Assembly: GCF_001194135.2 (NCBI RefSeq)
Contig: NC_068994.1
Coordinates: forward strand, 38,567,192 to 38,613,721
Source: Octopus bimaculoides
Taxonomy: Eukaryota
DNA length: 46,530 nt
Direction of reading: 5' to 3'
Positions 566-46,148 of this stretch are shown here, one piece after another. The notes beneath the pieces were generated by a model. It saw nothing but the letters and a program-made list of their open reading frames with translations, was not told the origin of the DNA and ran no database searches. Position numbers and translations under genes: made by a program. The number at the start of each line of letters is the position of its first letter. The first letter of the stretch is position 1.

Positions 566-601
<36 letters not shown>

Positions 602-1089
602 NNNNNNNNNNNNNNNNNNNNNNNNNNNNNNNNNNNNNNNNNNNNNNNNNNNNNNNNNNNNNNNNNNNNNNNNNNNNNNNNNNNNNNNNNNNNNNNNNNN
701 NNNNNNNNNNNNNNNNNNNNNNNNNNNNNNNNNNNNNNNNNNNNNNNNNNNNNNNNNNNNNNNNNNNNNNNNNNNNNNNNNNNNNNNNNNNNNNNNNNNN
801 NNNNNNNNNNNNNNNNNNNNNNNNNNNNNNNNNNNNNNNNNNNNNNNNNNNNNNNNNNNNNNNNNNNNNNNNNNNNNNNNNNNNNNNNNNNNNNNNNNNN
901 NNNNNNNNNNNNNNNNNNNNNNNNNNNNNNNNNNNNNNNNNNNNNNNNNNNNNNNNNNNNNNNNNNNNNNNNNNNNNNNNNNNNNNNNNNNNNNNNNNNN
1001 NNNNNNNNNNNNNNNNNNNNNNNNNNNNNNNNNNNNNNNNNNNNNNNNNNNNNNNNNNNNNNNNNNNNNNNNNNNNNNNNNNNNNNNNN
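602..1089. other. Assembly gap (others: 5847-6025, 12600-12872, 14029-14115, 18539-18918, 19895-20246, 26500-26928, 27809-28155, 29267-30014, 33259-33553)
   Basis: N runs, mostly flanked by microsatellites. Confidence 1.
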
Positions 1090-1112
1090 ATTACTAGTTT
1101 CTTTCAGTTTCT

Positions 1113-1331
1113 TATTTCTTTATTGCCCACAAGGGGCTAAACATAGTGGGGACAAACAAAGGGATTAAATCGATTGCATCGACTCCAGTGCATAACTGGT
1201 ACTTGATTTATCGACCCCGAAAGGACGAAAGGCAAAGTCGACCTCGGCAGAATTTGAACTCAAACGGAATGGCAGACGAAATACCGCTCAGCATTTTGCC
1301 CGCATGCTAACGTTTCTACCAACTCATTGCA
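1113..1331 (-). mobile_element. tRNA-derived SINE, family A, copy 1
   Basis: Minus strand reads ...gttagcatgcgggcaaaatgctgagcggtatttcgtc...gagtttgagttcaaattc...gaggtcgactttgcctttcgtcctttcggggtcgataaa; homologous copies at 1343, 25118 and 37325. Confidence 0.8.
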
Positions 1332-1342
1332 TTTCAGTTTCT

Positions 1343-1517
1343 TATTTTTTTATTGCCCACGAGGAGGCTAAACATAGAGGGGACAAACAAGGACAGACAA
1401 AGGGATTAAGTCGATTACATCAACCCCAGTGTGTAATTTGAACTCAGAATGTAACAGCAGATAAAATACTGCTAAGAATTTTGCCCAGCGTGCTAACGTT
1501 TCTGCCAGCTCACCGCC
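1343..1517 (-). mobile_element. SINE family A, copy 2 (central core deleted)
   Basis: Same head (ggcggtgagctggcagaaacgttagc) and tail as copy 1, but lacks the gtcgacctcgg/cgaaagg core. Confidence 0.75.
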
Positions 1518-1645
1518 TTTCAGTTTCTGTCAACCAAATCCAGTCACAAAGGTTTGGTTGGCTCAAGGCTATTGTAACCCAAGGTGCTAAACATTAGGAT
1601 TGTACTTGAAAGCAAGTGATTGGGAAGTGAATTCCTTAAACATGC
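1518..1645 (-). mobile_element. SINE family B, 5' part (interrupted by the family A copies)
   Basis: tttcagtttctgtcaaccaaatcc...caaaggtttggttggctcaaggctat is the reverse complement of the family B sequence at 13940-14010. Confidence 0.65.
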
Positions 1646-1980
1646 AATTAATTTGACTCAGATTTCTCCATTCATAGGTTATTCAACCAGTTTGGTTACA
1701 TAGGCCATTAAAGGTAATATCTAAGGTTCCATTCAAATCAATAAGTTTTAGTCTTCTTAAGATATAGTGTATTATCATCAATGAATAATTGCTGTTTTGT
1801 TAATAATAATATTTACATACATTATTTACATTATTTACATTTGACGGACAAAAGATGAAGACAAATATCTGTCAAATGCAAATAATGTACATAATTCCTC
1901 ATCTCTTAAATATAGAACTAACATTCACATACATATATAATAATATTTACATACATATATATATGGTGTGTGTGTATGTA

Positions 1981-2020
<40 letters not shown>

Positions 2021-2889
2021 TATGCAGTTAAGTTTAAGTCCAGTGACCAGTGGTTTAACATCAATAAAGGGCTTAGTTCCATGGGCAGCTTGCCAGATTC
2101 CAAAGCGAAAGACATATAACTCATCAACTCTGGGAGGCAGGAATCCGTTACAATCAGTTAGTAAGTAACCAAAAAATAAACAACCTGGGTCGGCAAGGAT
2201 GAATATATATGTGTGTGTGTGTGTGCATGTGTGTTACAAAATGTATATCATACATAAATACATAAAGCAGATACATTATTGAACACCTAATTAATTGCAG
2301 TATTCATCCTGAGATAGCATCTCTTATAGACATAGTGTTAAAAGATGCAGAAGTATATCAGTAGCAGATGAAAATTGTTCTGCAGAGGTAGTGGTCACGT
2401 TGCTAAATGTGCATTTCTCCATCTTTGGGCTTTGTCAATAAGAAGTTTCCATTGGTAACTGTATGCTAAGACAAAATCTGCCATTGCTAGTATAGTAAAA
2501 TAGTGAGTGAAAAATCATTGGTATCACAAAGTGAAACTGAGCCCAAGATCCAGTGGTTGGGAATCAAGCTTCTTCTTCTCACACCCATATCTGTACCTGT
2601 AAGTGTGTGTGTGTGTGTGTGAGTGCAATGTTTCACTTACATTAGTTTTGTTCGGTACTCAGTAGAAATACTATATGTTGGATTAAAGGTAATATACACA
2701 CATCTGCTTTGTATGATATATTCTAAATTCCAGCTTTTTCTACTTTATGTAAAAAAAAAACTTTGTTGTCATAACCCTAAACGATTTAATTAATTTCAAA
2801 TTTCATATGGAGTCATTCACAATTTGTTATGAGATGAGTGGAAGCTGGTGCTATAAAGCACATGTGTAATTGCTATCCACACACAGACG

Positions 2890-3165
2890 TTAACCAATGC
2901 CTTATGAATGAATTTGGAAGAGGAAATTGGGTAGAAATAAGTAGTATATATGTGTGTGTGTGTGCATGTATGTATCTCACTGAATGATAACCGATGTTAG
3001 ATTGTTTACATCCTCTAATGAAGTTGTCCAGCAAAAGGAGGCTTATGGAATAAGTACTAAACTTAAAAGAGAATAAGTACTAGGATTACTGGGCTTGAAT
3101 TCACTTGGAAGGTGGTATGCCAGCATGACCACAGTCAAATGGCAGAAAGAAATAAAAGAATACAA
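2890..3165 (+). mobile_element. Degenerate SINE family B, 3' part
   Basis: gaataagtact...ggtggtatgccagcatgaccacagtcaaatg matches 14250-14345. Confidence 0.55.
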
Positions 3166-3460
3166 AATAGAAGATACTCTACAAACACACATAAGCATGT
3201 GTTTTTACATATGTATATAAATGTTTGTGTATGCAAATATATATAAATTCACACCAAATATATATAAATATATATTTATTATTCTTAAGCAAAAATTGCT
3301 GTCGACAGTAACTTTGAAGTTTCAGTCAGCCAAACTTCGAAGTCACTGTCGACAACATTCTTGTTTTAAGAAGAAGAAATTTGTACTCTACAAAAGTATA
3401 GAGTAACCCTTCAGATTAATATAAAATTATTTTCATAATAACTGAACATAGAGATATCAG

Positions 3461-3491
<31 letters not shown>

Positions 3492-4886
3492 TTCTATACA
3501 TTTATGTTTGTACTCATATACATATACCTGTGTATATAGGTATATGTATACATACAAAAATATATGTGTACATGTGTGTATATGTATGCATAAAAACAGA
3601 ATGGGAGGTATGAAAAAATATTTACAAAGTGAGAAAATAAACCCAAGTTATCTTATCATAAGCATAAGTGTTATCTTCCGCTCACATCTTCCCAGATGTT
3701 TCAGAGGGGGTAATCTACCTTTAATTTGTTTTTTTTTTTATCTTTTCATATTTCATTTTATGTTATGAGACTTTAAAAACTTTCCTATTTTCTTAAAACA
3801 TTGACATATAGCAAGCAGCCTATGAAAAAGGGGGCAAGCCAGCTGAATATAATATTCACTCACATAATGTTGACCTCTTTTATAAATCTTTTAATAACTG
3901 AAGATTAAAAAAAAAAAAATACCAGATCTACCTTATTGCATTAAAACAAACAATACGTTTAAATATTATCATTGTTAGTAATAATAATGATGAAGAGGAT
4001 GATTATCAATGACTGATGCATGTAATGAATATATATAACGATGATGACACAACATACACATCATGTGTATGTCATCATCTCTATTTATATATCATTATAT
4101 ATGTATGCATATATGTATGCATGTATGTATGCATGTATGTATGCACTCATGTGTCTACATATGTATGTATACGTATGTGTGGACATATACCTATATATAT
4201 AAGTAGGTATATGCATACACATACAAATATATGAGCATGCATGTACATGTATGCATATATGTATGTATGCATGTATGTAATATACATTAATATGTGTGGA
4301 TGTATACCTACATATATGTATACCTACACATGTGCATACACATACAAAAATGTGAGCATGCATGCATGTACATACGTATGTATGTATGTGTCTTTTTATG
4401 GTTGGGGAAAAATTGTAGAGTATAAATTTGTTACCCTTAAACAAGAATGATGTTGATAGTGACTTCAAAATTTAGCTGGTTGAAACTTTAAAGTTACATT
4501 TATCAACACACACACACCAAATACATATATATGTATATATATATATGTATGTATGTATGTATATACACATATGTATATGTATATATACACATATATACAC
4601 ACATATGCATATATACATTCACACACATGGACCCATGTGCAAAAACATCATGTGTCTGTGTACATATTTGTGTGTGTGTGCGTGTGTTTGTGTCTACACT
4701 TGTGTGGAATTACGATAAAAGTTTGTTGGATGTTACTGAGTTGACCAATTTTTTTTTTTTGTTCATTCATGCAATACATTAAGAAAATGTGATTCATTGA
4801 AAAGTATATAAATAATCACACAGCAAATATCTATTTTATAAGAAGTTTTAAGAGAAGGGAACAAAGAGAAAAGTATTTTCACTTAC

Positions 4887-5050
4887 AAAACAGAGGCAGG
4901 ACGTTCGATGTGTTGACAAAAGTTCCTGTCTGCTGCCGAATTGAAGAGAGTCTTAAACGCTGTTATTGGAGGCTGTGGGAGTTGTTTTGCTTTGTCTGTG
5001 AGGAAGAGAGAGTGACTGGCTGGCTTCTTTTAAAAATGTTGTGTGTGTTT
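4887..5050 (-). other. Putative non-coding first exon of a second, tandem gene (probably a paralogous protocadherin; its coding exon would lie left of the window)
   Basis: TATAAATA at 5081-5074, donor T|GTAAGT at 4886-4881, and the 19-bp element shared with protocadherin exon 1. Confidence 0.55.
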
Positions 5051-5073: not shown

Positions 5074-5357
5074 TATTTATAAGCGAGTGTGTATGTAGGC
5101 AGGTTTGCGTGTATGTGTGTGTGTGTGCGTGTGTGTGTGCGTGCGCGTGTGCTGGGGCCAACTGCAGAGCTGCCGAAGCTTGTACGATAAAAAAAAACAA
5201 TAAATATGGATAAATATATGTGTGTGTGTGTGTTAAATACAGTAATGATGGTGGAGTTTGGGGTTTAGAGTAGTGAGGCTAGAGGGTGGGGTGGGCGGAA
5301 ATACAGCCCCTGATGCCTTTAGCAGGCAATTAGATTTTTCAGTGAGAATGAGTCATC
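5074..5357 (-). promoter_or_regulatory. Promoter of the putative second gene: TATA box, GT microsatellite, GC-box-like tract, conserved block with AP-1-like TGAGTCA
   Basis: TATA box 5074-5081; GGGGTGGGCGG around 5288-5298; GCAATTAG 5326-5333; TGAGTCA 5349-5355; homologous to 42470-42546. Confidence 0.55.
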
Positions 5358-8300
5358 GTGTTTTGGTCCAGAATCATACACCTGCATTGTATGTCATCAT
5401 CTCTATATCAAGAGATGAACAGTTTGGGCTGAAGACAAATATCATAGTAACATAAACGAAATAAAAAAAACAAAAATTATATTAAATAAATAAATAATTC
5501 CTATTAAATGGCTACAGATTTTACTCATATTATATTGTTATAATGAGTAAATGAAATATTTAAGGAATATTCTTGAAAAACTAAAACAAATAATTAAAAC
5601 GAAATAATATTAATTAATAAAAGAACAGTTGTCTTGAAATAAAAGAATAAATGTTGGTTCTTTTAAAATTGATTCAAATGTCAGGATTCATTTTGATTGT
5701 CTTGTCCGGAAGTCAATTTGCATTGTATTTGTTATTCATGTATTTCTTTTTTTTTTTTTTGTCAAATTAAAATGCTTGTCTGAAGTCCTAGTATGACCAT
5801 AACAGTATTGTTCCAATTAGCTTAAATAGGTTATGATAATTAAAGCNNNNNNNNNNNNNNNNNNNNNNNNNNNNNNNNNNNNNNNNNNNNNNNNNNNNNN
5901 NNNNNNNNNNNNNNNNNNNNNNNNNNNNNNNNNNNNNNNNNNNNNNNNNNNNNNNNNNNNNNNNNNNNNNNNNNNNNNNNNNNNNNNNNNNNNNNNNNNN
6001 NNNNNNNNNNNNNNNNNNNNNNNNNTTTGTTGTTTGTATCCTTGAATATAATATGAATAAAAACTTTAAACTTAAAATTCAATATAAGATTTATATTTAC
6101 ATATTTTTCTTTAAAGTGTCCTATTATTCATATATTTTCCCCATCTTATACAAAATAGCGGAGAGAAAAGAGGAACTCTGCAATTAATATTAAAACAAAA
6201 TATCTAATGTGTGTACTGTTAGTATAAATATAAGTTTGGTGGAATATTTCCTGTTTCATTTTGGGTATTTATCTAAAGACAGCTGACCAAAGTAGAATCT
6301 CAACAGCATGAACTAATTAACCATGCTTATTGCTGCTCTAATATCCAAGTTTTAATCAAGTGAAATGGTTTCTAAGCATTCCAATATTTAAGCTGATTAT
6401 TAAAAATTTTTTAAGTTTAAAGAATTATGTCTCAAAAGGATTTTTAATCTTTGGTTCATAATTCTGTCTCATGATGTTAATGATATTAATTATAAAATAA
6501 ATATTGGTTCATATTTGCTTTATACCAGTACTTATATGCTATATAGAAAACATACCCTTCCTGCAGAAAGGCTTGTTTAGCTTAATGTTTAAATATAAAG
6601 TCCCAAAAGATTCATGATAAAACCACAAACTGGAGTCTATGTTTATTTATTTATGCTTTGTTTGTAGTTCTTATCTAGTCTTATACACTAGGGAAAACTC
6701 CCCAACAGATTTAAGTTTAATTGAAATAAAATATATATATAAGTACATAGCAAGATGAGTTGGTGTTAAACTTTCGCTCAGCATTGATCAAAGGATCTTA
6801 TAATCAAATCCATTCTTGCCATGACCATCATGTCTTTTATTTCAGTTTATCTAGAACTATGTGTCCTCTTGTGGTAGGGGTGTGATCTGCAGAAAATTAA
6901 TCTGCTATTTCTAGCAGTTTGTGCAACTACATAGAGAATCTCTCGATGAGTTGATAGTGGTGATATTGGAAAGAAAAGATGGTTAAACTGATCTGGTAGC
7001 CAGAGAACGAACTTGTTGAGAAGCCAGCATTTATGTTCTATTACCAGCTTTGCATCTGCTTGTCCATGACTAAGGCACTTAACCCACAAAAACTGAGTCC
7101 ATAGGTCTCTATGTAAGTATGATGGACAATATAACAGACCAGTCTAGATAATAGCAACATTGTGGAAATGAAGAGGGACATTGGCTTATAGTGTTGTCTA
7201 CAGTTACTCTTGTAGGTAAAGTTATCTATGACAGACCAACATCAGAATAAAGGGGAAAGTTATCCCTCCTCCAAACACTAGCCAACTAATGTAAACACTA
7301 GCCTTTTGATTCAGTAAAGCATGACACATTGAGAGGTATAGTTAGCAGATGCATAAGATATATTTGTTCTTTTAAGTAATAGCTCATACTATGTTACCCG
7401 ATTGTACTGTAATAATATATCCTGTCCAAACTGACTTTATCCTCACTGGCTTAATTCACCTAACAGCAACAGCAACACTATGAAGAAGTACTTATTTAAA
7501 GCACTTTTCATTTCGACCTGCCTGAGATTGCCAAAAGTTCTATGACACAAAATTGTTCATTTAACAGTGTTTATATTTAAATAAAAATATTTCTTTACAA
7601 TTTTATGTTAGTTATGATGTAAACACCAGCTCGGATAATAAAGGAATTAATAATTTTTACTTAACTATTTCAAATCTTTGATTATGGAAACACATACACA
7701 TGAGAAATATGGTTATGAAAGAATTAAATCTACAAACTTCTGGGAGTGTAGTATAATTGCCAAATTTAGTCCATAAGGGACTGCTTTGAATAAAACAATA
7801 GCACCATGATACAGCTGCTATCACTCTTGAGTAAGTGTAACTTGGTAAGGTGGACCATGCTGTTACTAATTGTTATGTAGCTACAAGCAGACATAGATGA
7901 CATCTCATGTCTCCCTCATGTTTGACCTCAGTGGAACATTCAGGGTGTGATAGCTGGAGGGAGAGAGGACTGCACTAGTATCTGGCTTGCACTAATAATA
8001 ACTGCATACATAGCCTGCAATAATGTGAAATGAAGCGTCTTGCTCAAGGGGTTGAATTAAATCCACAACCTTATTATTTTGAGCTGAAACATCTTAATCA
8101 CTAAGGGCACACATTCCTCTGATGGAAAGAACATTGGAGCCGTTATCTTCGTTACACTTATCTCCAGTTAACGTTGTCAGAGAAATGAGCCCTGTGAGGT
8201 GGAGTGGCTGTTGCAATGAGAGTCACTGGCCATTCTCCATGGCAGCACCATCACAGTCATTACCGTGGGGCACAGCTGAGTGCACCATTTGTTCTGGGGT

Positions 8301-9705: not shown

Positions 9706-9894
9706 TGCTTTTGATTGTTAAACTTAATTTTCAGCTCTTTTCATTATTTGTTTTATATTTTTCATGGCTGAGGGCTCCTTTAAATTTTGTCATTGTAAAT
9801 GAAATTTTGGAGCAAAAAAAAAAAAGGATTCTTATAACTGGTGTCTCTTTATAAACACCAAATATTTTGTATTTATTCCAGTTTTCATATTGCT

Positions 9895-9937
<43 letters not shown>

Positions 9938-10259
9938 AAGTAGCAGCAGCAGCAGTTGTTATTGTTTTATTTACAATCAGTATTGATTGAGGAAGCATAA
10001 GTTCAAAATCATTACAGCCAGGGCCTTCCTATCTCTCAAGAGTTATTTAGAAATACATTATTTGATGTATTCTTTCTTTTGCCTTTTCGAAAATGCTAGG
10101 CAGTAGTTTGAGGAAACTTCATTGCATGACCACATAGATGTTCCTGGCTGCTATATTTAGCAGGTCTGGCAACTATGAATAGGATGAGGAAAAAAACTTC
10201 CTGAGTCACAGACTCACAGGGGTATTTTTCTGGTTTTTGTGGCGTATATATTACCCTTG

Positions 10260-13505: not shown

Positions 13506-13768
13506 TTACATCTTTGGTATCGCTGGCAGTGGTTTCGAATAGCAATTGAAACTGTTTTTCTTTGGTAAATTCCAAGGTTTTGATGCCAATGTAGGATCTG
13601 TTGTGTTAGCTCTGTTTGATTTCAGATCAATGATATCAGTAGGAAGTGGGTTTTTAGCTCTTTTCAGTGACTGATTGCATTCTGATGAGGAAGTATCACA
13701 TTCACTTTTCTGGTTGAAAGACTGTTGGGGATATTCAGGCAATTCAGGCTCTATCTCATCCATTCTGG
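13506..13768 (-). CDS. Pcdh: Probable protocadherin terminal exon 4 (cytoplasmic C-terminus ending KPLPAIPKM*)
   Basis: Long pyrimidine tract ending ttttcttttgtcatcAG|CC AGA ATG is phase 1, matching the exon 3 donor (G|CC = Ala). It has 86 further non-repetitive codons to TAA, and AATAAA lies about 230 nt downstream. The link to exon 3 rests on phase and position, not transcript data. Confidence 0.75.
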
Positions 13769-13853
13769 CTGATGACAAAAGAAAACAAAACACCAATAAG
13801 AAATATAAAAATAAAAATAAAAAAAAAATAAAATAAAAAAATAATAAATAATA

Positions 13854-14355
13854 GGCACAGGAGTGGCTCTGTGGTAAGAAGCTTGCTTCCCAACTACATG
13901 GTTCTGAGTTCAGTCCCACAGCGTGGCACGTTGGGCAAGTGTTGTCTACTACAGCCTTGGGCCAACCAAAGCCTTGTGAGTGGATGTGGTAGATGGAAAC
14001 TGAAAGAAGCTTGTCATTTATATATATANNNNNNNNNNNNNNNNNNNNNNNNNNNNNNNNNNNNNNNNNNNNNNNNNNNNNNNNNNNNNNNNNNNNNNNN
14101 NNNNNNNNNNNNNNNAAATATATATGTATGTATATATATGCATGTATTTGTTATTTTTGCATGTGTTCGTCCCTCCACCATTGCGTGACAACTGATGTTG
14201 GTGTGTTTAGATCCCCGTCACTTAGTGGCTCAGCAAAAAGAGACCGATAGAATAAGTACTAGGCTTACAAAGAATAAGTCCTGGGGTCAATTTGTTCGAC
14301 TAAAGGTGGTGCTCCAGCATGGCCACAGTCAAATGACTGAAACAAGTAAAAGAAC
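13854..14355 (+). mobile_element. SINE family B, near full length (spans an N gap and internal TA repeat)
   Basis: tRNA-like head ggcacaggagtggctctgtggtaagaagcttgcttcc...ggttctgagttcagtccc; 3' end ggtgctccagcatggccacagtcaaatgactgaaacaagtaaaaga. Partial copies at about 2510-2600(-), 16630-16686(-), 24470-24620(-), 33555-33660(-), 44325-44480(+) and 45820-45945(+). Confidence 0.8.
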
Positions 14356-25117: not shown

Positions 25118-25350
25118 TGTTCAGCAATTACAATATACTTTTCTACTCGAGGCACAAGGCCCGAAATTTTTTGGGAAGGGGCCAGTCGATTAGATCGACC
25201 CTAGTATGCAACTGGTACTTAATTTATCAACCCCGAAAGGGTGAAAGGCAAAGTCGACCTCGGCGGAATTTGGGCTCAGAACATAAAGACAGACAAAATA
25301 CTGAAAAGCATTTCACCTGGCATGCTAATGTTTCTGCCAGTCTGTTGCCT
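25118..25350 (-). mobile_element. SINE family A copy
   Basis: ccccgaaagggtgaaaggcaaagtcgacctcggcggaattt...atgctaatgtttctgccag matches 1200-1320. Confidence 0.8.
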
Positions 25351-29266: not shown

Positions 29267-30093
29267 NNNNNNNNNNNNNNNNNNNNNNNNNNNNNNNNNN
29301 NNNNNNNNNNNNNNNNNNNNNNNNNNNNNNNNNNNNNNNNNNNNNNNNNNNNNNNNNNNNNNNNNNNNNNNNNNNNNNNNNNNNNNNNNNNNNNNNNNNN
29401 NNNNNNNNNNNNNNNNNNNNNNNNNNNNNNNNNNNNNNNNNNNNNNNNNNNNNNNNNNNNNNNNNNNNNNNNNNNNNNNNNNNNNNNNNNNNNNNNNNNN
29501 NNNNNNNNNNNNNNNNNNNNNNNNNNNNNNNNNNNNNNNNNNNNNNNNNNNNNNNNNNNNNNNNNNNNNNNNNNNNNNNNNNNNNNNNNNNNNNNNNNNN
29601 NNNNNNNNNNNNNNNNNNNNNNNNNNNNNNNNNNNNNNNNNNNNNNNNNNNNNNNNNNNNNNNNNNNNNNNNNNNNNNNNNNNNNNNNNNNNNNNNNNNN
29701 NNNNNNNNNNNNNNNNNNNNNNNNNNNNNNNNNNNNNNNNNNNNNNNNNNNNNNNNNNNNNNNNNNNNNNNNNNNNNNNNNNNNNNNNNNNNNNNNNNNN
29801 NNNNNNNNNNNNNNNNNNNNNNNNNNNNNNNNNNNNNNNNNNNNNNNNNNNNNNNNNNNNNNNNNNNNNNNNNNNNNNNNNNNNNNNNNNNNNNNNNNNN
29901 NNNNNNNNNNNNNNNNNNNNNNNNNNNNNNNNNNNNNNNNNNNNNNNNNNNNNNNNNNNNNNNNNNNNNNNNNNNNNNNNNNNNNNNNNNNNNNNNNNNN
30001 NNNNNNNNNNNNNNTTTTAGAGTGCATTCAACATATTGCACATCCAAAGATTTGGCTGTTATTTCTAGGAAGCATATGTAGCATGTGTATGTA

Positions 30094-33258: not shown

Positions 33259-34419
33259 NNNNNNNNNNNNNNNNNNNNNNNNNNNNNNNNNNNNNNNNNN
33301 NNNNNNNNNNNNNNNNNNNNNNNNNNNNNNNNNNNNNNNNNNNNNNNNNNNNNNNNNNNNNNNNNNNNNNNNNNNNNNNNNNNNNNNNNNNNNNNNNNNN
33401 NNNNNNNNNNNNNNNNNNNNNNNNNNNNNNNNNNNNNNNNNNNNNNNNNNNNNNNNNNNNNNNNNNNNNNNNNNNNNNNNNNNNNNNNNNNNNNNNNNNN
33501 NNNNNNNNNNNNNNNNNNNNNNNNNNNNNNNNNNNNNNNNNNNNNNNNNNNNNTATATGACAGGCTTCTTTCAGTTTCCTTCTATGAAATCCATGTACAA
33601 GGCTTTGGTTTACCATGGGCTATTATAGAAGATACTCCTTCATGGTGCCATGCACTGGGATGGTTGTCAAACAATTTTCGTAACTCCACAACTGCACTTA
33701 TGCCTATGTTTGAATTAAAACTGTCCATTACTGTTTTACTTTAGAACTGTTTTAAAGTTTTGCTTTAGAAACCGACTTAATGAATTTTAGTTATTTTACT
33801 AAATCCCTTACTAATTTTCAAAATTAATTTAAACGCATAGTGCATTTTATTAAAAAAAATAGGCATAAAAGTGTTAATGATAAACATGCCAAACACTTAA
33901 GTTCTAATTAGAAGTAGAGGGAGCAATACTATGTGAGAAATGGGCTTGCATAATATGTAGGAAGGAAACTGGTAGGAAGTCAATATGTACTCAGCTTATG
34001 ATATGGGTACATGAATGTCACAGTGAGATCTCTCATAAACTGACAGAGGAAATCCCTTATAAACTGACAGAGGAGTGGGATTCACAAATATAATTAGCAG
34101 CATGACCATGGTTCCATTTGGATGAGCTACAGCCATCGTATTGAAGGCAGTGAAGAAAAAATCTAATTAATTAACAATAATGAATTAACAATGTAGTAAG
34201 GAACAGAAAATGTTATTTTAATCTGATTTTCATAAGATTAGGCAACAACTCAAAACAATTTGTATAACCCTCTTTGTCCTTGTCACTTTAGTGAGAAGAG
34301 AATTACTATGTAGATGTTCAATAAGGTACATGATTAGCTGTGAATCATAATTATCATCATAACAATTATGAAGAAGGTACCCAGGGATGCGATCTGCACA
34401 GAAAATAACAGACAAGTTA

Positions 34420-36036: not shown

Positions 36037-36196
36037 CTGGCAATTCCTCATAGAGGATTGTGTTGCCATCACTACAACCATGGCCACTGTCATCATATGA
36101 CGACATTGTGGACTTCTCACTAAAATGATCAGAAGATGTCAGCATATCTTCTCTTTCTCTGAAATTCTCAGCTGCCAATGAATTATGTAAGGCCAT
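36037..36196 (-). CDS. Pcdh: Protocadherin exon 3 (cytoplasmic, DSGHG / CM1-like motif)
   Basis: Acceptor ctctttattcccttccAG|ATG is phase 0, matching the exon 2 donor. 160 bp encode MALHNSLAAENFREREDMLTSSDHFSEKSTMSSYDDSGHGCSDGNTILYEELP plus 1 nt. Donor CAG|GTAAGT, phase 1. DSGHG resembles the CM1 motif of delta-type protocadherin tails. Confidence 0.88.
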
Positions 36197-37552: not shown

Positions 37553-38544
37553 ATATCTCTAGCAGCATTAATTTCCAAGAAGCATCAAGCATGATGCAAT
37601 CTTTTGTCATAAGTTATTAATATCCTGCTGTTTTAAGGAGATGTTACAATTCCTAGGAATCTATATGTGAATGAAATGTTACTACATATCAATACGAGCC
37701 ACGAGTTCCCAAAGTTGATGTTATGACCTTTTACTATTTGTTAGAATTTAGGTAGCAGTGTGAATTAAAGCTCTCTATGCAATTATTCATAAGAGGCTTA
37801 TTATTAACTCCTCAGTATCTATTGTGCTATTATACAGTATTAAATAATCCATAGTTGCTGATTGTTACTGTGGGTTAGCTTCATGTCAGCCCCAATCAAG
37901 CCAACCTATGATCGAAGGTGTTCCAACGATTAATATCTCATTTCATCTATTTTCTATATTTAGGAAAATATTGCCCAATGTATACTTCATTTTTTTTAAG
38001 ACACTAGATGGTGTGATTTGGCTGCTATTTCTAGCAAGTTGAGCAACTGAATATACACTCCTTTATTGACTTTTATATATTTCAGGGTACAGCATTAAGG
38101 CATAGAGACAAAATTGAAAAGGTTTAAGATTCTCTCATGTTGAAAACAATATCTGAGATAAAGACTCAGAAATAAACATTTTGTATAGTTTTGTATCAAA
38201 ATCAATCAAACTATTTGTGCTATGTAAAGGAGCATTGATCTAATAAGAATTCTTAGGCTAAATGAATTAATACAGTTTTTAAGTATTGATGAGTATTAGT
38301 CATATATCGAAAAGAAAGCAAAAAAAGCATCAGCTGTAGCCAATATTGTTATCAAAATTATTGATTCAGTAAAACAGCTCCTTGTTTGGAACCTTAGAAA
38401 ATTGTATATGAGATAAAGTTAGAATTTTACTATAAGACAGAAGAGAACTAATACAGATCTTACTGAAGATTTAGAATTGTCTAATATACATTTTGATCTG
38501 ATTCATGCATTTTATTTTTATTCATGTAGATATTGCATGTTTAC

Positions 38545-40923
38545 CTGGTTTGTTCCTTGGCAGATGTTCTGTCGATGAGACTGTAATGGAGAACCATGCC
38601 ATGTTGAATCATGGTAAAGCTCCTTTCTTAATAATGTTGCCTGAGAAACTGCAGAATTAATTCCTGGGTGTGTCAACATTACTTCTTGACTGTCACTTTG
38701 GGGAGACATTGGGTTACATCCATATTCAGACTGCCCATTTTGATTCATGAATTTCTGTCCTTGTTCTCGCCTTTCACAGTAAAGGATTTCTCTCCGATGG
38801 TTTCTCCTCACAATGCACACTGTTATGGAGACCACAATAGTTATAGATACAATAACTGCTGCTACTAGTATAATAACCATCACATTGACAGGTATTTCTT
38901 TGGTTGATAGTTTATGACGACTTGTCAAAAATTTGGAAGTACTATTGCTGACTGTCAATGTTAAAGTTAATGAAGTTGTTGTTGACAAAACTGGAGTGCC
39001 ACTATCTTTAACAGACACATTCAGTTTATAGAAACCAGCATCAATATTGTAAACAGAGCGAGAAAAAGATATGACTCCAGAGTACATGTCAAGGGAAAAT
39101 AACTTCTTGTCATTGCCCTCAAGTATTTCATATTGAAGGAAAGCATTCAACTGACTATCTCTGTCGTATGCTCTGAGAGTTGTGATGGCTTTTTGTCTTT
39201 GAGGATGGTAATGGACTTTAAGATGGAATGGATCAACTCCAGGAAAAGTGAAATATGGAACATTATCATTTTTATCCATAATTTCAACAATGACATTTGC
39301 TGTATTTTTCAATGGGGGTGTCCCATTATCTTTGACTACGACTGCCAATCGATATCTGTCTTGTTTCTCTCTATCCAGTGGTTGTGTTGTTGTGATAAAT
39401 CCATAGTTTGAAATTCTAAAAGGAACTATATTTTCAGTAGAATTCAAGAGATAATATGTCAGTTGACCTCCTGCTCCCAGATCTGGATCGGTGGCATTGA
39501 TTAGACCAATTGGAAAGTCTGGTTCTCCATTTTCATATGTAAAAAACTGAAAACTTTCCTGACTGAACTGAGGTTTTACATCGTTGATATCTGTCACTTG
39601 TATAGAAATTTTTCTAACAGCTGTCTTTGGAGGAGTGCCTCTGTCTTGACAAGATATGTTAAAATCAATGTAGCTGTTTGCTTCTCTGTCTATGGCATTC
39701 TTCACAACAATCTTATATTTCTTGTCATCTAATGGTTGAAGAATAAAATCCTCATGTTCCAATTCGCAGCTTACTTGTCCATTGTTGCCAATATCATTGT
39801 CAATAACCTTCACATATGCTACAAAACTACCAATATCAACATCTTCAGAAATGCTGGCCGTGTCTTCATTTGTCTGTGAAAAGAAGTTGAGCTCTATACT
39901 TGGACTCCCATTATCTTGATTTTCAATGTTGATTTGTAGAATGGCTGTTGAACTCATTGATGGACTGCCACCATCTCTGGCATCAATATACAGCAAATAT
40001 TTGTGTTTCTTATTAAATGAGAAATCATTTGACAAGAATACTTCTCCTGTTGCATTATTTAGTTTGAAATATAATTTGGCCAATGGTGTAGTTTTAGTTC
40101 CAAAATGGTAAGAAACTTTTCCATTTCTTCCAGCATCAATATCACTTGCTTGTAACCTAACAATGGGTTTCCTTGTTTGGTGTGTATTGTTTAGTGAAAT
40201 ATTATAGGTATTTTGAGCAAAGACAGGGGCATTATCGTTTTCATCTGTGACAATTATCTGAACATTTGAGACACCTAACTTTGGTGGAGTGCCTCCATCT
40301 TTAGCAATTATTTGTACAAAATAAGTGTCTTTTATTTCTCGATCTAATTCTTCAGTCAGGATAATTTCAAGTTTTGAAGAACCATCCACTCTTTTGTCTG
40401 TTTTCAACTTGAATTGCTTATGTATATTTCCCAGCCTGTAAGTGATCTGCGAATTTAAAAAACCAACGTCTTTGTCGACTGCATTTGGGACTGATTTTTT
40501 GGTTCCTTTCCCATCTGTTTCATAAAACTGTAGGTTTATGTACTTTTCTTGAAAATCTGGTCGGTTGTCATTAACATCTTCTATTATTACTTTCACTTCA
40601 AGTATCTTAACAAATGATTTTTTCTTTAGGACAGCAATTTCAAGTATTTCAAAGCATTCTGTATTGTATTTACATGTAATTTCAGCATCAATTGTTTTTG
40701 CCAAATAAAGTCTTCCCTTTTTGCTGATATTAAAAAAGTCAGAGAACTCATTCTTTTGTAGCGGAGAAAATTTTACTTCACTTCGCCTTATAGATGGCAG
40801 TGTCACATTACGTGCAATATCTCCAATGAAGGTTCCTGGCAGTAAATTTTCTTTCACTCTATATGTAATGTCCACACTCAGAGATGTGGTGAAAAGTAAC
40901 AGAAAACACACTTCTCTCAACAT
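38545..40923 (-). CDS. Pcdh: Protocadherin coding exon (exon 2): signal peptide, EC1-EC6, TM helix, proximal cytoplasmic tail (aa 1-793)
   Basis: 801-aa ORF. N-terminal hydrophobic signal MLREVCFLLLFTTSLS. Repeated cadherin motifs DVNDN, LDRE, DENDN, DxD, KDGGTPP, DKNDN. EC1 has a C-X5-C motif (CKYNTEC) and no Trp2. TM VMVIILVAAVIVSITIVVSITVCIV (about 38883-38809). Acceptor tttaatttcAG at 40938-40937, 13 nt before the ATG; donor CAG|GTAAAC after 38545, phase 0. The symbol is family-level only. Confidence 0.97.
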
Positions 40924-41277
40924 TATAAAAATTTACCTGAAATTAAATTTAAAAAAGAAACAAAAACAAAAAGAAATATTGTAAATATTATTTGTCATGT
41001 GTTTTGCACACAATTTACTGCAAAATCAGTTAAAAACAACAACATGAACGAAGAATAAAAAAGGGTAAAACAATGTTCATGATTGTATGTCTTGTTATAG
41101 AAATCAACTTCTGACTTCTGCCTTTTCTATTCTTTTACAACTGTCTTGTGACAGCTTACTTCAATATCAAACAATTAAGATTAGATGGATTGTTATGAGT
41201 GACATTGTTTGTGATTATTGCACTTGCATCCATTCCCCTTCTAGGTGAAGGTGACTAATACAAAAAGGAATAAGGAG

Positions 41278-41295
41278 AGTAAGAGAGAGAGAGTA

Positions 41296-41372
<77 letters not shown>

Positions 41373-41377
41373 GAGAG
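41278..41377. repeat. (GA)n microsatellite in protocadherin intron 1
   Basis: Direct inspection. Confidence 0.95.
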
Positions 41378-42184
41378 AATTGTTATTGTTTTCCTGGGAC
41401 ACTTTACAAGTAAGCTAACTATTGTGAAACAATATTAACAATCAATAAACAATAACCTAAAATAGCAATGCTATACAGTGAAAGGCTTTATATATATTTA
41501 TTTCCATCTTGGAAATATTGTCATGAGTGTATTTATCTTTCATTTATCACCAGAAAATATGCAGGTTCTTAAATATCTTCTAATTATGAAAAAAGTAAAA
41601 TAGATTTCCAGAATTTACAGAAAAACAAGAAAGAAAAAAAGTAAAGAAAATATTGCAATTATTGCCATATTGTTAATTTTAAAATCCAATGTAATTACTT
41701 TTGAGTAGTGTTAACAATTATTACAATAATTATTATAATAGAGTTGTCAACAATAATAAACAAAGTCATCAACATGAAAACATAAGAAAACTTGCTTCTC
41801 TTTTCTCTGACTCATTCACAAACCTGTTTGTTTATTAATGATAATTTATTCACTATTTATATATTGATTATATATACTGGATGTTGTGAAAACTGTTGAA
41901 TGCTTAAACTTGAACTAAATGGTTAAATTTTGCAAACAAAAATTATATTTATAAGAAAGATCACAGACTGATGTAACATGCATAAAAATAATCACCACTG
42001 ACTCTGAAGGAATAAAACACCATGTAAACAAGAGTAAGGTAGGGCTCTTTGTTCTTACGCAATGGTTTATAATTGGTTATATGTATGAGATAAGGCAGTG
42101 TTGTTGCCTAACAACTTCTAAAGCAACTAAAGAGAAAATATATATTTGGAGAAAATACAAAATTGACAAAGAAAACTGACTTAC

Positions 42185-42460
42185 ATAGATGCAGATCCTT
42201 TTTGTGTGTCATCTATCCAGAGACAAAAAAAAACCCTGTCCCTTTACTGCTTAATGATAATCCCTCGTGCTTAATATTCTGTGTTAGTGTTTTAAGGATT
42301 GTGAATGCTGTTTTGCTTTGTCTGTGATGGAGTGAAACCGGCTTGCTACTTCTTCATGTGCTTATGCTGTGTTGTGTTGTGCTGTGTGTATGTTGTATAC
42401 ACAGTAGCCAATAGCAGGCAGCTTATGCTTAATACTTGCTATCCAGTAAGGTGTAGTAGG
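42185..42460 (-). other. Putative non-coding exon 1 (5' UTR) of the protocadherin; 5' boundary approximate
   Basis: Donor AT|GTAAGT at 42184-42179, 1.25 kb upstream of the exon 2 acceptor. Contains a 19-bp element identical to 4983-5001. Confidence 0.6.
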
Positions 42461-42469
42461 GTGTAAATA

Positions 42470-42546
42470 GGTGGGGAAGGGGGAACAGGAAACATAGGCC
42501 CCCTGTCTCCCTCAGCAATTAGGATTTTCTATATAAATTAGTCATC
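42470..42546 (-). promoter_or_regulatory. Conserved promoter block of the protocadherin (G-rich tract, GGAAA..GCCCC, GCAATTAG-N17-AGTCATC)
   Basis: Aligns with 5284-5357; the 32-bp block 42515-42546 matches 5326-5357 at 24/32 positions without gaps. Confidence 0.6.
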
Positions 42547-43553
42547 AGTCTATATTTCTTTCCTTAAATTGAATTTCAGAATTATCATCAAGGATCATAA
42601 ATCAAAAATCATACTAATGTAACAAATAAAAGCCTGAAATTTTAAGAGAAATAAATTTCTCACTTTTATTTTCAGGTTTTGCATAAAGACAAAAAAAAAT
42701 GCAAAAAAACCAGAAGCAAAAAAAAAAAACAACAAATATATATTTCTTGTATTGATTGCATTTGTAAATATAAAAAGGAACTTAAGAAAATCGACAAATA
42801 AGCAAAAATTTAATTATAATCACACTTTCTACATTTTATTAATTAATTACAAAACTAATTGGGACAGTTATCAAGTTTGGCTTACTTCTTTCTAACAAAG
42901 GAAAAGTTTAGGGAAGCATCAATATTTATTCTTTTGTGCATGTCTATGTCTGTCTGTGTTGTATAACCCTTGGTTAGCCTTTATCCTGCAGACAAATGAA
43001 TCTTTAAAGACATTCTACCCATGACCATTCCATCTTATTTTCATAGATGATGCATCTAGGACTACAATATTCAAAGTCCTTTCTTTGTCTAAGATGGTAG
43101 AGCTTGTGATATGAGGCAAATTTAGATACTGTTTTTAGCAGGTCAAATGATCATACAGAGGCATGTTCATTATCATTATATCATGTAGCACGTGTAGTAA
43201 TAATGTATGTGTATATGTGTACTTGGCACAGTGTGTGTATGTGTGTGCAAGTGTGTGCATGTATGTGCATGTGTATGCGTGCATGTGTGTGTGTGTGTGT
43301 GTGTGTGTTTGCACAGAATCATGTTTACAATGTTTGGAGACAGAAAAGAGGGAGTGAAAGGAGCGAGAACGACAGAAAGAAAATATGGGGAAAGAAAGGA
43401 AAGAGATGGGGGGGGGACACACAAAGAGACAGCAGAAGTAAAACATGTAAAGTAATATGTATGACCAAAAATTTTAAGGAACCCTAATGGATAAAGCCAT
43501 ATCATAAGTGATGGCGCTAAAGGCACATAGATTAATATCAAATAATTAAATAA

Positions 43554-43881: not shown

Positions 43882-44951
43882 ATATGCTTCATGAGATGGA
43901 AACATTTCCCAGATATGCTTTTTGCATGATGATGAAATATTTAAAAAGGAGCTGACATAATATATTTAGTCAAATAAAAGAGCAAAATATAAAAATATAA
44001 ATCATTGAAAGTTATATCACTAATTAAAAATAAAATAATCATTAATTACCATTAAAGATAATTCTTGTCCAAAGCATAGTAACTACTCCAAAATTCAACT
44101 TGATTAAAAAGAAATTGAATGGTGAGTGACATCATACAGAGAGGATATTTGTCTGATCCTTTATAAGAATAGGGACAATTCCAGACATGTCTAAATTTTA
44201 AAGTAAATTTGTTCCCACTTAGCTATATATTCTCCATGCAGGAAGCAGCCCTGAGACGTTTTTCTATGTCATAATTTTACATTTCCTAATCACTCACTTT
44301 TGTATATGTGTATACAACGATCTTAGGTGTGGTTGTGTGGTAATAAGTTTGCTTTCTAACCACATGGTTCAGGGTTCAGTCCCATAGTGTGGCACTTTAT
44401 GTGAGTGTCTTTGACTATAGCCCAAAGCAAACCAAAGGTTTGTGAGTGAATTTGATGAATGGAAACAGAAAGAAGCCTGTCATATATATTTGTATGTATG
44501 TATGTATGTGTGTATGTATGTATGTACTTATTATTTATGTATGTATGTATGTATCTATGTATGCATGCATGTATGTATGTATGTATGTATGTATGTATGC
44601 AAGTATAAATGTACATATTTATGTATATAACTATGTGTGTATGTGTGTGCATCTTTGTATCTGGTTAATACATTAAGACTATTCCACTGAGGAGATTTAA
44701 TAAGGCTCAAACATGTCTCAAGTTGATTACATATTTATCAAATATCAGACACACTCCACACTGCATGCTCCACTCTTCAATTTTAATGAGCATTAAGCAT
44801 TAATCCTTAAGAAAATTAGAAATTTATTTTAATTATGGGTGTAATATTGACTGATTAAACATAATTTTCTTTGTTGGCCAACTGTATTAAGAATGTGTTA
44901 ATTCCCACTAGAGGTGTGTGTATGTATGTATATGCATACACACACATATTG

Positions 44952-45003
<52 letters not shown>

Positions 45004-46148
45004 CATATGTACATATGTACACATACATAAACAAACTCACACACACACACTCATATATCACCATCATCCTCATTCAACATCAATTTTTCATGGTGGCATG
45101 GGCTGGACAGTTTAACTGGAATTGCTATTATTATTTGCATAAATATATACATACCTCTACACACACATATGTATATATAATTACTAATATGTACATGCAT
45201 GCTCATATATGCACACATGTGTGTGCACACATATATATGTGTTTGTTTGTGTCTGTGTATGCATGGATATGTGCATATATGTATATACCTGTGTGCATGT
45301 ATGCATGCATGTATGTATGTGTGTTTGTGTGTTTGTGTGTGTATGTGTATTTATACACACACATGCACACACACAATTATTATACACACACACAATTATT
45401 ATACACACACACACGCAATAGCTTTAACCTTGCCTCTAGTCAACTCAATCCTAGTTAGTGAAATTGGAATGATGTTGGAAACTGCTTGGAAGCCTGACAA
45501 ATAAACTCTAGCTGTAATTCAATGGGCCAGCTTCCTTAATCGGTGTGTCATGTGCCATGTAGATTCTGATGAATTATTATGTGAGAAGTACAATTGTCTA
45601 TAAAATACTCAGCCTCTTGTACCATAGTTGAGGAAGAAGGAGTTCAGTTAATTGAGAAACTGGAATACTTGTAGTTAAAAAGTGACGGAAGAGACTTTTA
45701 TCAGGAGTTGGCTGAAAGATTCATAGGCTGACTAAGAAATTCTCATGGAATGTGACCAAATGAGATTTATTTTTCGGCATAGTGACCCTTGCGGTCCACA
45801 CACTTCTTCTATTGGTCTTGTAACCATGTGGTTTCATGTTTAGTCCCACTGTGTGGCACCTTGGATAAGTGTTTTCTACTATAGCTCTCAGGTTGACAGT
45901 TGCCTTGTGAGTGAATTTGGTACATGGAAACTGAAAGAAGCTCCCTGGAAATACAAAACTGTAAGGACCTTTTGGATATTAACAAATGAGGAACTAGGTA
46001 TGAATTTTACATTTGCTATGTTTTTGGTAATTGTTTGAAATATTATCTGTGTAATGCTACACACTCCTGCACTCCTGCTTTATATGTGTGAGTGTGTGTG
46101 TGTGTCCTTTAAGTTCATTTACAGGAATCCAAGGATTATTATTGTTAT

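What the first reader, a model, noticed from the sequence alone, without database searches (positions are those of the whole stretch)
42488..42546. Conserved promoter block shared by two tandem loci 37 kb apart: a candidate cephalopod protocadherin promoter element
Seen: 42515-42546 (GCAATTAG GATTTTCTATATAAATT AGTCATC) aligns without gaps to 5326-5357 (GCAATTAG ATTTTTCAGTGAGAATG AGTCATC), 24/32 identical with an exact 17-nt spacer. Both are preceded 27-29 nt earlier by GGAAA-N4/5-GCCCC(C)TG and a G-rich tract. Both lie 330-440 nt upstream of a minus-strand GTAAGT donor, while flanking DNA does not align. The block holds a homeodomain-like CTAATT and an AP-1-like T(G/T)AGTCA. The minus-strand CAGGGG(G)C resembles the CTCF core only weakly. 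Established: vertebrate clustered protocadherin promoters share a CTCF-bound conserved sequence element used in stochastic promoter choice, and cephalopod protocadherins expanded independently. Inference: this is a selectively retained cis-module that may be a convergent promoter-choice element. I am not aware of a description of it but could not search.
Basis: partly seen in the sequence, partly recalled or inferred. Interest (0 to 1): 0.8.

Follow-up and report, generated by a model that had tools for sequence, protein, structure and literature searches.

The report
Paralogous octopus protocadherin promoter module
Two neighbouring protocadherin genes of Octopus bimaculoides keep the same short DNA motifs in front of their non-coding first exons, conserved as far as Argonauta. 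The motifs were found only at this gene pair among the seven protocadherin genes sampled, so they are not a family-wide 'promoter-choice' element like the vertebrate one.

Summary
GCAATTAG-N17-AGTCATC occurs exactly twice in the window, at 5326-5357 and 42515-42546, with 24/32 identity.

The two regions are collinear homologues over about 450-650 nt (z about 10 against shuffles). They include a 19-nt exact block, TCACAGACAAAGCAAAACA.

The window is from O. bimaculoides. Locus 2 lies 1.6 kb upstream of the ATG of a protocadherin, gene A. Locus 1 lies 8 kb past A's 3' end and belongs to the next protocadherin, gene B, whose coding exon lies outside the window. I found B in the O. vulgaris orthologous locus.

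Both modules are conserved at orthologous positions in O. sinensis, O. vulgaris and Argonauta hians, where most non-coding DNA no longer aligns. That supports purifying selection.

The module is absent from five other protocadherin genes (about 590 kb scanned). Its CAGGGG box misses the CTCF core at 5-7 of 14 positions. A and B do not share constant exons.

It is therefore a gene-pair-specific proximal regulatory module, not a counterpart of the vertebrate conserved sequence element (CSE). The transcription start site and the bound factors remain untested.

The parts
42470..42620 (-). Gene A upstream conserved island. It contains blocks A and B plus about 75 nt of 5' flank that is also shared with locus 1.
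   Evidence: Paralogue alignment. Octopus-Argonauta identity peaks at 95% over 42560-42521.
42515..42546 (-). Block A of gene A: GATGACTAAT-TTATATAG-AAAATCCTAATTGC. It holds a bZIP/AP-1-like TGACTAA, a TATA-like spacer and a homeodomain-type TAATTG.
   Evidence: It is 94% identical to Argonauta L002 4645-4678.
42488..42505 (-). Block B of gene A: CAGGGGGCCTATGTTTCC, followed by a C-rich/CACCC-like tract at 42462-42487.
   Evidence: It is a weak CTCF-core match only (6 of 14 mismatches).
42400..42462 (-). Segment of gene A conserved with Argonauta, including an inverted CCAAT box (GCTATTGGCTA, about 42401-42411). Locus 1 has only a degenerate counterpart (CAGTTGGC).
   Evidence: 42460-42441 is 100% identical to Argonauta.
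42309..42329 (-). Block D of gene A: CATCACAGACAAAGCAAAACA. It lies in or at the start of the non-coding exon 1.
   Evidence: Exact 19-mer shared with 4983-5001. Conserved in all species.
42185..42329 (-). Gene A non-coding exon 1. The 5' end is unknown and is shown from block D as a minimum. The last base is 42185 and the donor GTAAGT is at 42184-42179.
   Evidence: The donor is conserved in four species. Its use is inferred by paralogy with gene B.
38545..40936 (-). Gene A exon 2. The acceptor tttcag| lies 13 nt before the ATG at 40923. It encodes aa 1-793 of protocadherin XP_014774871.2.
36037..36196 (-). Gene A exon 3.
13506..13768 (-). Gene A exon 4 (last coding exon; stop at 13508-13506).
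5290..5446 (-). Gene B upstream conserved island, containing blocks A and B.
   Evidence: Window 5287-5467 matches Argonauta L002 67724-67919 at 79%. TAATTGCCTGCTAAAGGCATCAGGGGCTGTATTTCCGCC is 39/39 identical to Argonauta.
5326..5357 (-). Block A of gene B: GATGACTCAT-TCTCACTG-AAAAATCTAATTGC. It holds a perfect TRE, TGACTCA, plus TAATTG.
5297..5312 (-). Block B of gene B: CAGGGGCTGTATTTCC, followed by CCGCCCACCCCACCC (GC/CACCC-box-like).
4887..5003 (-). Gene B block D plus non-coding exon 1. The last base is 4887 and the donor GTAAGT is at 4886-4881. Positions 5003-4937 are 65/67 identical to Argonauta.
   Evidence: In the O. vulgaris model CAI9732439.1 this donor is joined to an acceptor 68 nt upstream of gene B's ATG.

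Best explanation
The block is one piece of a roughly 150-nt upstream island, which together with a non-coding first exon forms the 5' regulatory region of two adjacent, head-to-tail protocadherin genes of Octopus bimaculoides.
- Gene A is XP_014774871.2 and its coding exons are in the window.
- Gene B is the orthologue of O. vulgaris A0A411DZ05, and its ATG lies beyond the window start.

The two regions are homologous. They descend from an old whole-gene tandem duplication, or from an equally old conversion event. Since then most of the sequence has decayed, while a collinear set of short blocks has been held by purifying selection.

The most likely mechanism is ordinary. The blocks are binding sites for sequence-specific transcription factors in a proximal promoter or promoter-proximal enhancer:
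- a bZIP/AP-1-type site, TGACTCA in B and TGACTAA in A;
- a homeodomain-type TAATTG;
- a GGAA/TTTCC box;
- a C-rich Sp/KLF-like tract;
- in gene A, a CCAAT box further downstream.
These sites would give the two paralogues related transcriptional inputs.

What is shown and what is inferred:
- Shown: homology, collinearity, orthologous conservation, gene assignment, and use of B's exon-1 donor in an annotated model.
- Inferred: that transcription starts here, which factors bind, and that A and B are co-regulated.
For: - Motif and 19-mer are far above chance.
- Collinear alignment has z about 10 against dinucleotide shuffles.
- Gene A is identified as a protocadherin with 793/795 aa identity to O. 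bimaculoides XP_014774871.2. Its exon structure is mapped.
- Gene B is identified in O. vulgaris locus L005. Locus-1 block A is at 52211-52241. The 934-aa protocadherin has its ATG at 68501 and is 98.7% identical to P0003.
- An annotated O. vulgaris model joins the locus-1 donor to an acceptor 68 nt upstream of B's ATG.
- Both modules are present at orthologous positions in O. sinensis, O. vulgaris and Argonauta.
- They are among about ten collinear non-coding segments of the 46-kb window that still align to Argonauta.
- Locus-specific states (TGACTAA against TGACTCA, and TAATTGCT against TAATTGCCTGCT) are fixed across the Octopus species. This indicates independent evolution under constraint rather than recent conversion.
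- No other paralogous non-coding similarity exists upstream or in intron 1.
- There is no sign of structured RNA, an Rfam family or a tRNA.
Against: - No TSS, chromatin or expression data could be consulted, so 'promoter' rests on position and conservation.
- The distance between the upstream island and block D or the donor varies. In locus 1 it is 260 nt in O. bimaculoides and about 600 nt in O. sinensis and O. vulgaris, filled with microsatellite. The island may therefore be an upstream enhancer rather than a core promoter, or the first exon may start at the island.
- Factor assignments are consensus look-alikes only. The TATA-like TATATAG of locus 2 and the CCAAT box are not shared by locus 1.
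- Annotated read-through models show that transcripts from the upstream gene can enter these exons, so some of the conservation could serve splicing.
Confidence: 0.72

Rival explanations
1. One reading: a family-wide cephalopod protocadherin promoter element, analogous to the vertebrate CTCF-bound CSE and used for stochastic promoter choice.
For: The block sits upstream of two tandem protocadherin genes and is under constraint. CAGGGGGC matches 8 consecutive positions of the CTCF core in locus 2. Regulation of cephalopod PCDH clusters is an open question (PMC10658181).
Against: - Blocks A, B and D are absent from the upstream regions of five other protocadherin genes. One of these has its whole 92-kb upstream interval in hand. 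They are also absent elsewhere in about 590 kb.
- The CTCF core has 5-7 of 14 mismatches, while matches with 4 or fewer mismatches occur 4.6 times per kb in the background. The box is GGAGGGGAT in Argonauta locus 2.
- There is no CGCT box.
- The block is 1.6 kb and about 16 kb from the ATGs, against about 200 bp for the CSE (PMC4978886).
- There are no shared constant exons (PMC9068888).
Confidence: 0.04
2. The similarity comes from gene conversion between A and B, not from selection on regulatory function.
For: Conversion clearly operates between these genes. Exon 2 nt 600-2250 is 87-100% identical between A and B, which is higher than the Octopus-Argonauta orthologue identity of 78-86%. Nt 1-600 is only 50-63% identical.
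Against: - The promoter similarity is a mosaic of 8-21-nt islands in unalignable sequence, not a contiguous tract.
- Each locus carries its own substitutions shared by the Octopus species, and mostly by Argonauta, so no conversion has occurred there since before that split.
- Orthologous conservation at each locus separately needs constraint in any case.
- An ancient conversion as the origin of the homology cannot be told apart from duplication.
Confidence: 0.08
3. The blocks act at the RNA level, or as splicing signals. Block A would lie inside a long 5'UTR exon. Block D and the 65-nt ultra-conserved stretch would form the 3' splice region of an internal exon used by read-through transcripts from the upstream gene.
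For: In O. vulgaris an annotated model uses an acceptor, CTCTTCAG|TT, directly after the ultra-conserved stretch of locus 1. Read-through models ending just before the next gene's ATG recur in L003, L005 and L007. Exon 1 of B is 65/67 identical to Argonauta, more conserved than the coding sequence.
Against: - That acceptor AG is absent in O. bimaculoides (CTCTTCAATT).
- There is no thermodynamic structure signal (z from -1.6 to +1.2).
- Indels of 7 and about 95 nt in Argonauta fall inside or next to block A.
- Block A is made of classical DNA-binding-site cores.
Confidence: 0.12
4. Chance resemblance, or a fragment of a dispersed repeat or transposon.
For: Short AT-rich motifs such as TAATT and TGACTNA are common. 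The window is rich in interspersed repeats and microsatellites.
Against: - Shuffle tests.
- The blocks are collinear.
- There are exactly two copies per species, at syntenic positions in four species, and no further copy in about 590 kb.
- A whole-genome scan was not possible.
Confidence: 0.02

Closest known systems
Vertebrate clustered-protocadherin CSE/SSE promoter elements (CTCF-bound)
   Same: Short conserved elements upstream of tandemly arrayed protocadherin genes. They are conserved between species and combine paralogue-shared positions with gene-specific ones, as the CSE and SSE do (PMC3333863).
   Different: - The CSE is common to nearly all cluster members, lies about 200 bp upstream of the ATG of each variable exon, carries a CGCT box, binds CTCF and serves promoter choice among exons spliced to shared constant exons (PMC3333863, PMC4978886).
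- Here the element is seen at 2 of 7 genes sampled and lies 1.6-16 kb from the ATG, in front of a separate non-coding exon.
- It has no CGCT box or CTCF core, and each gene has its own 3' exons.
Sub-cluster-specific 13-bp promoter motif of Xenopus tropicalis pcdh-gamma2 15-36
   Same: A promoter motif restricted to a contiguous subset of tandem protocadherin paralogues rather than the whole family, with an unknown binding factor (PMC4978886).
   Different: The Xenopus motif is shared by 22 genes at a fixed position about 200 bp upstream of the ATG. Here only two genes share the motifs, at variable distance, together with a homologous non-coding exon.
Phylogenetic footprints / conserved non-coding elements in promoters of duplicated genes
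   Same: Islands of 8-40 nt are held by purifying selection in otherwise decayed paralogous and orthologous 5' regions. They are composed of recognisable transcription-factor site cores.
   Different: Nothing essential. This is the category it belongs to. The particular module has not been described in the papers I could search.

Membership tests
Vertebrate-type protocadherin CSE (CTCF-bound promoter-choice element) | Present in the promoters of nearly all clustered family members | tested here: not met
   Found at genes A and B only. Absent upstream of five other protocadherin genes (L003 x2, L004, L006, L007) and from about 590 kb in total. Caveat: three of the five had only 10 kb of upstream flank, and gene B's own exon 1 lies about 16 kb from its ATG.
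Vertebrate-type protocadherin CSE (CTCF-bound promoter-choice element) | CTCF core motif / CGCT box | tested here: not met
   The CAGGGG sites have 5-7 of 14 mismatches to CCASYAGRKGGCRS. Background matches with 4 or fewer mismatches occur at 4.6 per kb. The box is not conserved in Argonauta locus 2. There is no CGCT in blocks A or B. This was a consensus comparison, not a position-weight matrix; the consensus is from my own knowledge.
Vertebrate-type protocadherin CSE (CTCF-bound promoter-choice element) | Located about 200 bp upstream of the start codon of each variable exon | tested here: not met
   The block lies 1592 nt upstream of A's ATG, across a 1.25-kb intron. In O. vulgaris it lies 16.3 kb upstream of B's ATG.
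Vertebrate-type protocadherin CSE (CTCF-bound promoter-choice element) | Alternative promoters feeding variable exons into shared constant exons | tested here: not met
   A and B each have their own exons 3 and 4, with C-terminal regions only about 46% identical. PMC9068888 states that cephalopods use full gene duplications instead.
Vertebrate-type protocadherin CSE (CTCF-bound promoter-choice element) | CTCF/cohesin occupancy and stochastic single-cell choice | not testable with these tools
   No ChIP, ATAC or single-cell data were accessible.
Proximal promoter / conserved non-coding regulatory element | Lies immediately 5' of a first exon whose donor is spliced to the coding exon | tested here: met
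   For gene B, the donor at window 4886-4881 equals L005 52982, which an annotated O. vulgaris model joins to the acceptor at 68433. For gene A this is inferred from the homologous, conserved donor and from the acceptor 13 nt before the ATG.
Proximal promoter / conserved non-coding regulatory element | Orthologous conservation above the neutral background | tested here: met
   Conservation with Argonauta reaches 94-100% in the peaks, while most of the window's non-coding DNA does not align to Argonauta.
Proximal promoter / conserved non-coding regulatory element | Mapped transcription start / open chromatin | not testable with these tools
   No CAGE, cDNA or ATAC data were available. The gene ranges returned by the look-ups start at the CDS.
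AP-1/TRE site | Consensus TGA(C/G)TCA | tested here: inconclusive
   The site is perfect (ATGACTCAT) in locus 1 of all four species. Locus 2 has TGACTAA in all four. Binding was not tested.
Interspersed repeat / transposon fragment | Multiple dispersed copies | tested here: not met
   There are two copies per species, at syntenic sites only. A whole-genome count was not possible.

The most novel reading that the evidence does not exclude
A and B form a two-gene unit. Gene conversion keeps EC3-to-transmembrane nearly identical, while EC1-2, the likely recognition domains, stay as different as in unrelated family members. The shared upstream module would then be the common regulatory address through which one input, possibly an activity-dependent bZIP/AP-1 factor together with a homeodomain factor, drives expression of the pair. 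It could drive the two genes together or choose between them. Read-through transcription from A into B's first exons could contribute promoter interference. That would be a small-scale, CTCF-independent analogue of protocadherin promoter choice.
Probability: 0.08. Interest if true: 0.55.

Novelty: new member of a known kind. Interest (0 to 1): 0.3.

Why it matters
How cephalopods regulate their independently expanded protocadherin arrays is unknown. A shared promoter-choice element would have been a striking convergence with vertebrates. The evidence here argues against that for this motif. The element is a deeply conserved regulatory module, but it was found only at this one gene pair.

It still has practical value. 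It gives two well-delimited, phylogenetically footprinted promoter candidates for reporter or ATAC work in octopus, with defined cores: TGACTNA, TAATTGC, CAGGGG..TTTCC and TCACAGACAAAGCAAAACA.

The same locus also gives a clean example of domain-restricted gene conversion (EC1-2 spared) in an invertebrate protocadherin pair. This parallels the pattern described for vertebrate clusters.

Tried and rejected
- **Gene B in the window.** I looked for its coding exon in window 1-4880 and found none. Its intron 1 is about 15.5 kb in O. vulgaris.
- **Guessing the neighbour by similarity.** P0005 and P0007 turned out to lie megabases away.
- **Accession-number adjacency.** This helped only indirectly. 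The look-up of the O. vulgaris orthologue P0122 solved the question.
- **Look-ups that gave no DNA.** P0022, P0062 and P0021 were not on record, and the gene ranges of P0017 and P0014 were too long. As a result, the paralogue closest to A in EC1-2 (the P0178/P0021 group) could not be tested for the module.
- **CTCF reading.** Rejected on the consensus comparison.
- **Structured RNA, miRNA, Rfam family or tRNA-derived element.** Rejected.
- **Other paralogous non-coding similarity between units A and B.** There is none apart from interspersed repeats.
- **TSS from sequence features.** The TATA-like TATATAG inside block A of locus 2, a TATAAATA at about 5088-5081 in locus 1, and the CCAAT boxes are not conserved between the two loci or between species, so I did not commit to a TSS.
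- **Literature.** Albertin 2015 (PMC4795812) is not held. No paper found describes a cephalopod protocadherin promoter motif.
- **Collections.** No collection available here holds whole cephalopod genomes for a pattern scan.

Full report
**Observation.** GCAATTAG-N17-AGTCATC occurs only at 5326-5357 and 42515-42546, even with two mismatches allowed, against 0.13 matches expected. The GGAAA-N4/5-GCCCC(C)TG box (42488-42505 and 5297-5312) and the minus-strand GTAAGT donors (42184-42179 and 4886-4881) are confirmed, at the stated distances.

The statement that the flanks do not align is wrong.
- A 19-nt exact repeat, TGTTTTGCTTTGTCTGTGA, lies at 4983-5001 and 42309-42327 (expected 0.05).
- The local score is 28 against 12.8 +/- 1.5 in 300 dinucleotide shuffles. 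The chained score is 177.6 against 89.9 +/- 8.6.

The finding is therefore the most visible piece of two homologous 450-650-nt regions.

**What the loci are.** The window carries an 801-aa cadherin-repeat ORF on the minus strand (38518-40923). It is 97% identical to O. sinensis 'protocadherin gamma-B1-like' and matches O. bimaculoides XP_014774871.2 at 793 of 795 residues. The window is therefore from O. bimaculoides.

I call this gene A. Mapping the 933-aa product gives these exons on the minus strand:
- exon 2: 40936-38545 (ATG at 40923; acceptor 13 nt upstream);
- exon 3: 36196-36037;
- exon 4: 13768-13506.

Locus 2 lies 1.6 kb upstream of the ATG. It is followed by a non-coding exon that ends at the conserved donor at 42185.

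Locus 1 lies about 8 kb beyond A's stop codon, and no cadherin ORF follows it in the window. The orthologous O. vulgaris locus (L005) resolved this.
- There the locus-1 block sits at 52211-52241.
- A second protocadherin exon starts at 68501. It encodes a 934-aa product that is 98.7% identical to UniProt A0A411DZ05. I call this gene B.

Locus 1 is thus the 5' region and non-coding exon 1 of gene B. Its intron 1 is about 15.5 kb, which puts B's coding exon outside the window.

**Conservation.** The window is collinear with the O. sinensis locus (L001) at 80-93% identity. With the Argonauta hians locus (L002) it aligns only in exons and about ten short non-coding segments. Both promoter regions are among those segments.
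- Window 42514-42547 matches L002 4645-4678 at 94%.
- Window 5287-5467 matches L002 67724-67919 at 79%.
- Window 4939-5011 matches at 92%.
- In locus 2 the whole stretch 42710-42150 is alignable, with peaks at block A (95%), at 42460-42441 (100%) and around block D.
- In locus 1 there are two islands, 5445-5290 and 5030-4860. A non-conserved microsatellite spacer of variable length separates them.

Invariant in all eight sequences (two loci in four species) are [A/G]TGACT[A/C]AT, an A-run, TAATTGC, AGGGG..TAT.TTTCC, and CACAGACAAAG...CA.AACA.

Each locus keeps its own state across species. Locus 2 has TGACTAA and locus 1 has TGACTCA. The two copies have therefore evolved separately under constraint since before the Octopus-Argonauta split.

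The 17-nt spacer is 24 nt in Argonauta locus 1. Argonauta locus 2 has a 95-nt insertion between blocks A and B, so spacing is not rigid.

**Is it a protocadherin-wide element?** I fetched five further protocadherin genes:
- L003, two O. sinensis genes, one with its full 92-kb upstream interval;
- L004, O. bimaculoides;
- L006 and L007, O. vulgaris.

None has block A, B or D, or any blastn-short hit better than chance in a sensible position. The composite TGACT[AC]A-N6..30-TAATTG occurs only at the A and B sites in about 590 kb.

The caveat is that three of these genes had only 10 kb of upstream flank. Gene B shows that a first exon can lie further away than that.

The CTCF reading fails. The CAGGGG sites have 5-7 mismatches to the 14-nt core consensus, while matches with 4 or fewer mismatches occur 4.6 times per kb in background DNA. 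The box is not kept in Argonauta locus 2.

The vertebrate CSE differs in every defining respect. It is about 22 bp long, is common to nearly all cluster members, lies about 200 bp upstream of the ATG, carries a CGCT box and binds CTCF (PMC3333863, PMC4978886). It also operates on variable exons spliced to shared constant exons. Genes A and B each have their own 3' exons. Albertin et al. 2022 state that cephalopods diversify protocadherins by full gene duplication instead (PMC9068888).

**Rival readings.**
- Chance or a repeat is excluded by the shuffles, the collinearity and the strictly syntenic two-copy distribution.
- Structured RNA is not supported (z from -1.6 to +1.2). There are no Rfam or tRNA hits.
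- Gene conversion is real at this locus but does not explain the promoter pattern (next section).
- A role in splicing of read-through transcripts cannot be excluded for block D and the ultra-conserved stretch of B's exon 1. However, the acceptor used in O. vulgaris is absent in O. bimaculoides.

**History of the pair.** Over exon 2, A and B are 50-63% identical in the first 600 nt. They are 87-100% identical from nt 600 to 2250. That exceeds the identity between the Octopus and Argonauta orthologues of A, which is 78-86%.
- By the N-terminal 200 residues, A and B are not each other's closest paralogues. They are 43% identical, while A reaches 54% with another group.
- By the C-terminal exons they are each other's closest (about 46% against 40% or less).
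- Outside exon 2, the only paralogous similarity is the promoter/exon-1 module.

The simplest reading is as follows:
- An old tandem duplication included the promoter, the non-coding exon and the 3' exons.
- Recent conversion was confined to EC3 through the transmembrane region.
- Selection maintained the regulatory blocks.

**Mechanism (inference).** The module looks like a cluster of transcription-factor sites in a proximal promoter or promoter-proximal enhancer:
- a bZIP/AP-1-type heptamer;
- a Q50-homeodomain-type TAATTG;
- a GGAA/TTTCC box;
- a C-rich Sp/KLF-like tract;
- in A, an inverted CCAAT box about 75 nt upstream of block D.

The TSS probably lies between block B and block D, or at block D. 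I could not test this.

**Verdict.** It is a conserved cis-regulatory module seen only at this gene pair among the seven genes sampled, inherited by two neighbouring paralogues. It is not a convergent counterpart of the vertebrate protocadherin CSE. I found no prior description of it. In kind, however, it is an ordinary phylogenetic footprint.

Noticed in passing
window about 40323-38670 (gene A exon 2, nt 600-2250); L005 10601-12250 vs 69100-70750: Domain-restricted gene conversion between genes A and B. Exon 2 nt 1-600 (EC1-2) is 50-63% identical, but nt 600-2250 is 87-100% identical. That is higher than the Octopus-Argonauta orthologue identity of 78-86%. The pattern mirrors that described for vertebrate clustered Pcdhs. 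Conversion in cephalopod PCDHs has only been suggested in general terms (PMC9068888, PMC6339937).
   Followed up: partly
L005 43583->52919..52981->68433..68455; L005 1-9879; L003 10001-104511; L007 1-9951: Annotated read-through models recur. The upstream protocadherin's last exon is spliced, through an internal donor just before its stop codon, into the next gene's non-coding exon 1 and the 5'UTR part of its exon 2. The model then stops 25-122 nt before that gene's ATG. This was seen in O. vulgaris and O. sinensis annotations. Whether these are real transcripts or model artefacts is unknown.
   Followed up: partly
window 5003-4937 (minus strand): Non-coding exon 1 of gene B is 65/67 identical between O. 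bimaculoides and Argonauta. That is more conserved than the coding exon (83% nt). The stretch contains a forward CCAAT (CTCCAATAAC).
   Followed up: partly
window 6227-6504: A further non-coding element is conserved with Argonauta (74.6% over 283 nt; L002 65834-66106), about 0.9 kb upstream of gene B's island. It has no paralogous counterpart upstream of gene A.
   Followed up: partly
window 41272-41501 and 41797-41902: Two segments in intron 1 of gene A are conserved with Argonauta (73-76%). No counterpart was found in gene B's intron 1 within the window.
   Followed up: no
L005 9760-9880 vs 9880-10003: O. vulgaris carries a local tandem duplication of about 122 nt that includes the exon-2 acceptor and start codon of gene A. 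O. bimaculoides has a single copy (window 41045-40915).
   Followed up: no
window 13506-13600 (gene A C-terminus) and the C-termini of P0003, P0005, P0007, P0038: Octopus protocadherins share a C-terminal motif, WNLP(K/M)(K/R)NSF..Y.KPLP..PK. Each gene encodes it in its own last exon, so it is a paralogous copy and not a shared constant exon.
   Followed up: partly
window 13819-14353, 33554-33660, 44324-44521, 45822-45941; also 1113-1444, 25184-25340: Copies of interspersed repeats of about 200-430 nt match many places in all fetched loci at 70-92% identity. Long CA/TG and TA microsatellites are abundant, and there are ten N-gaps (for example 602-1089 and 29267-30014).
   Followed up: no
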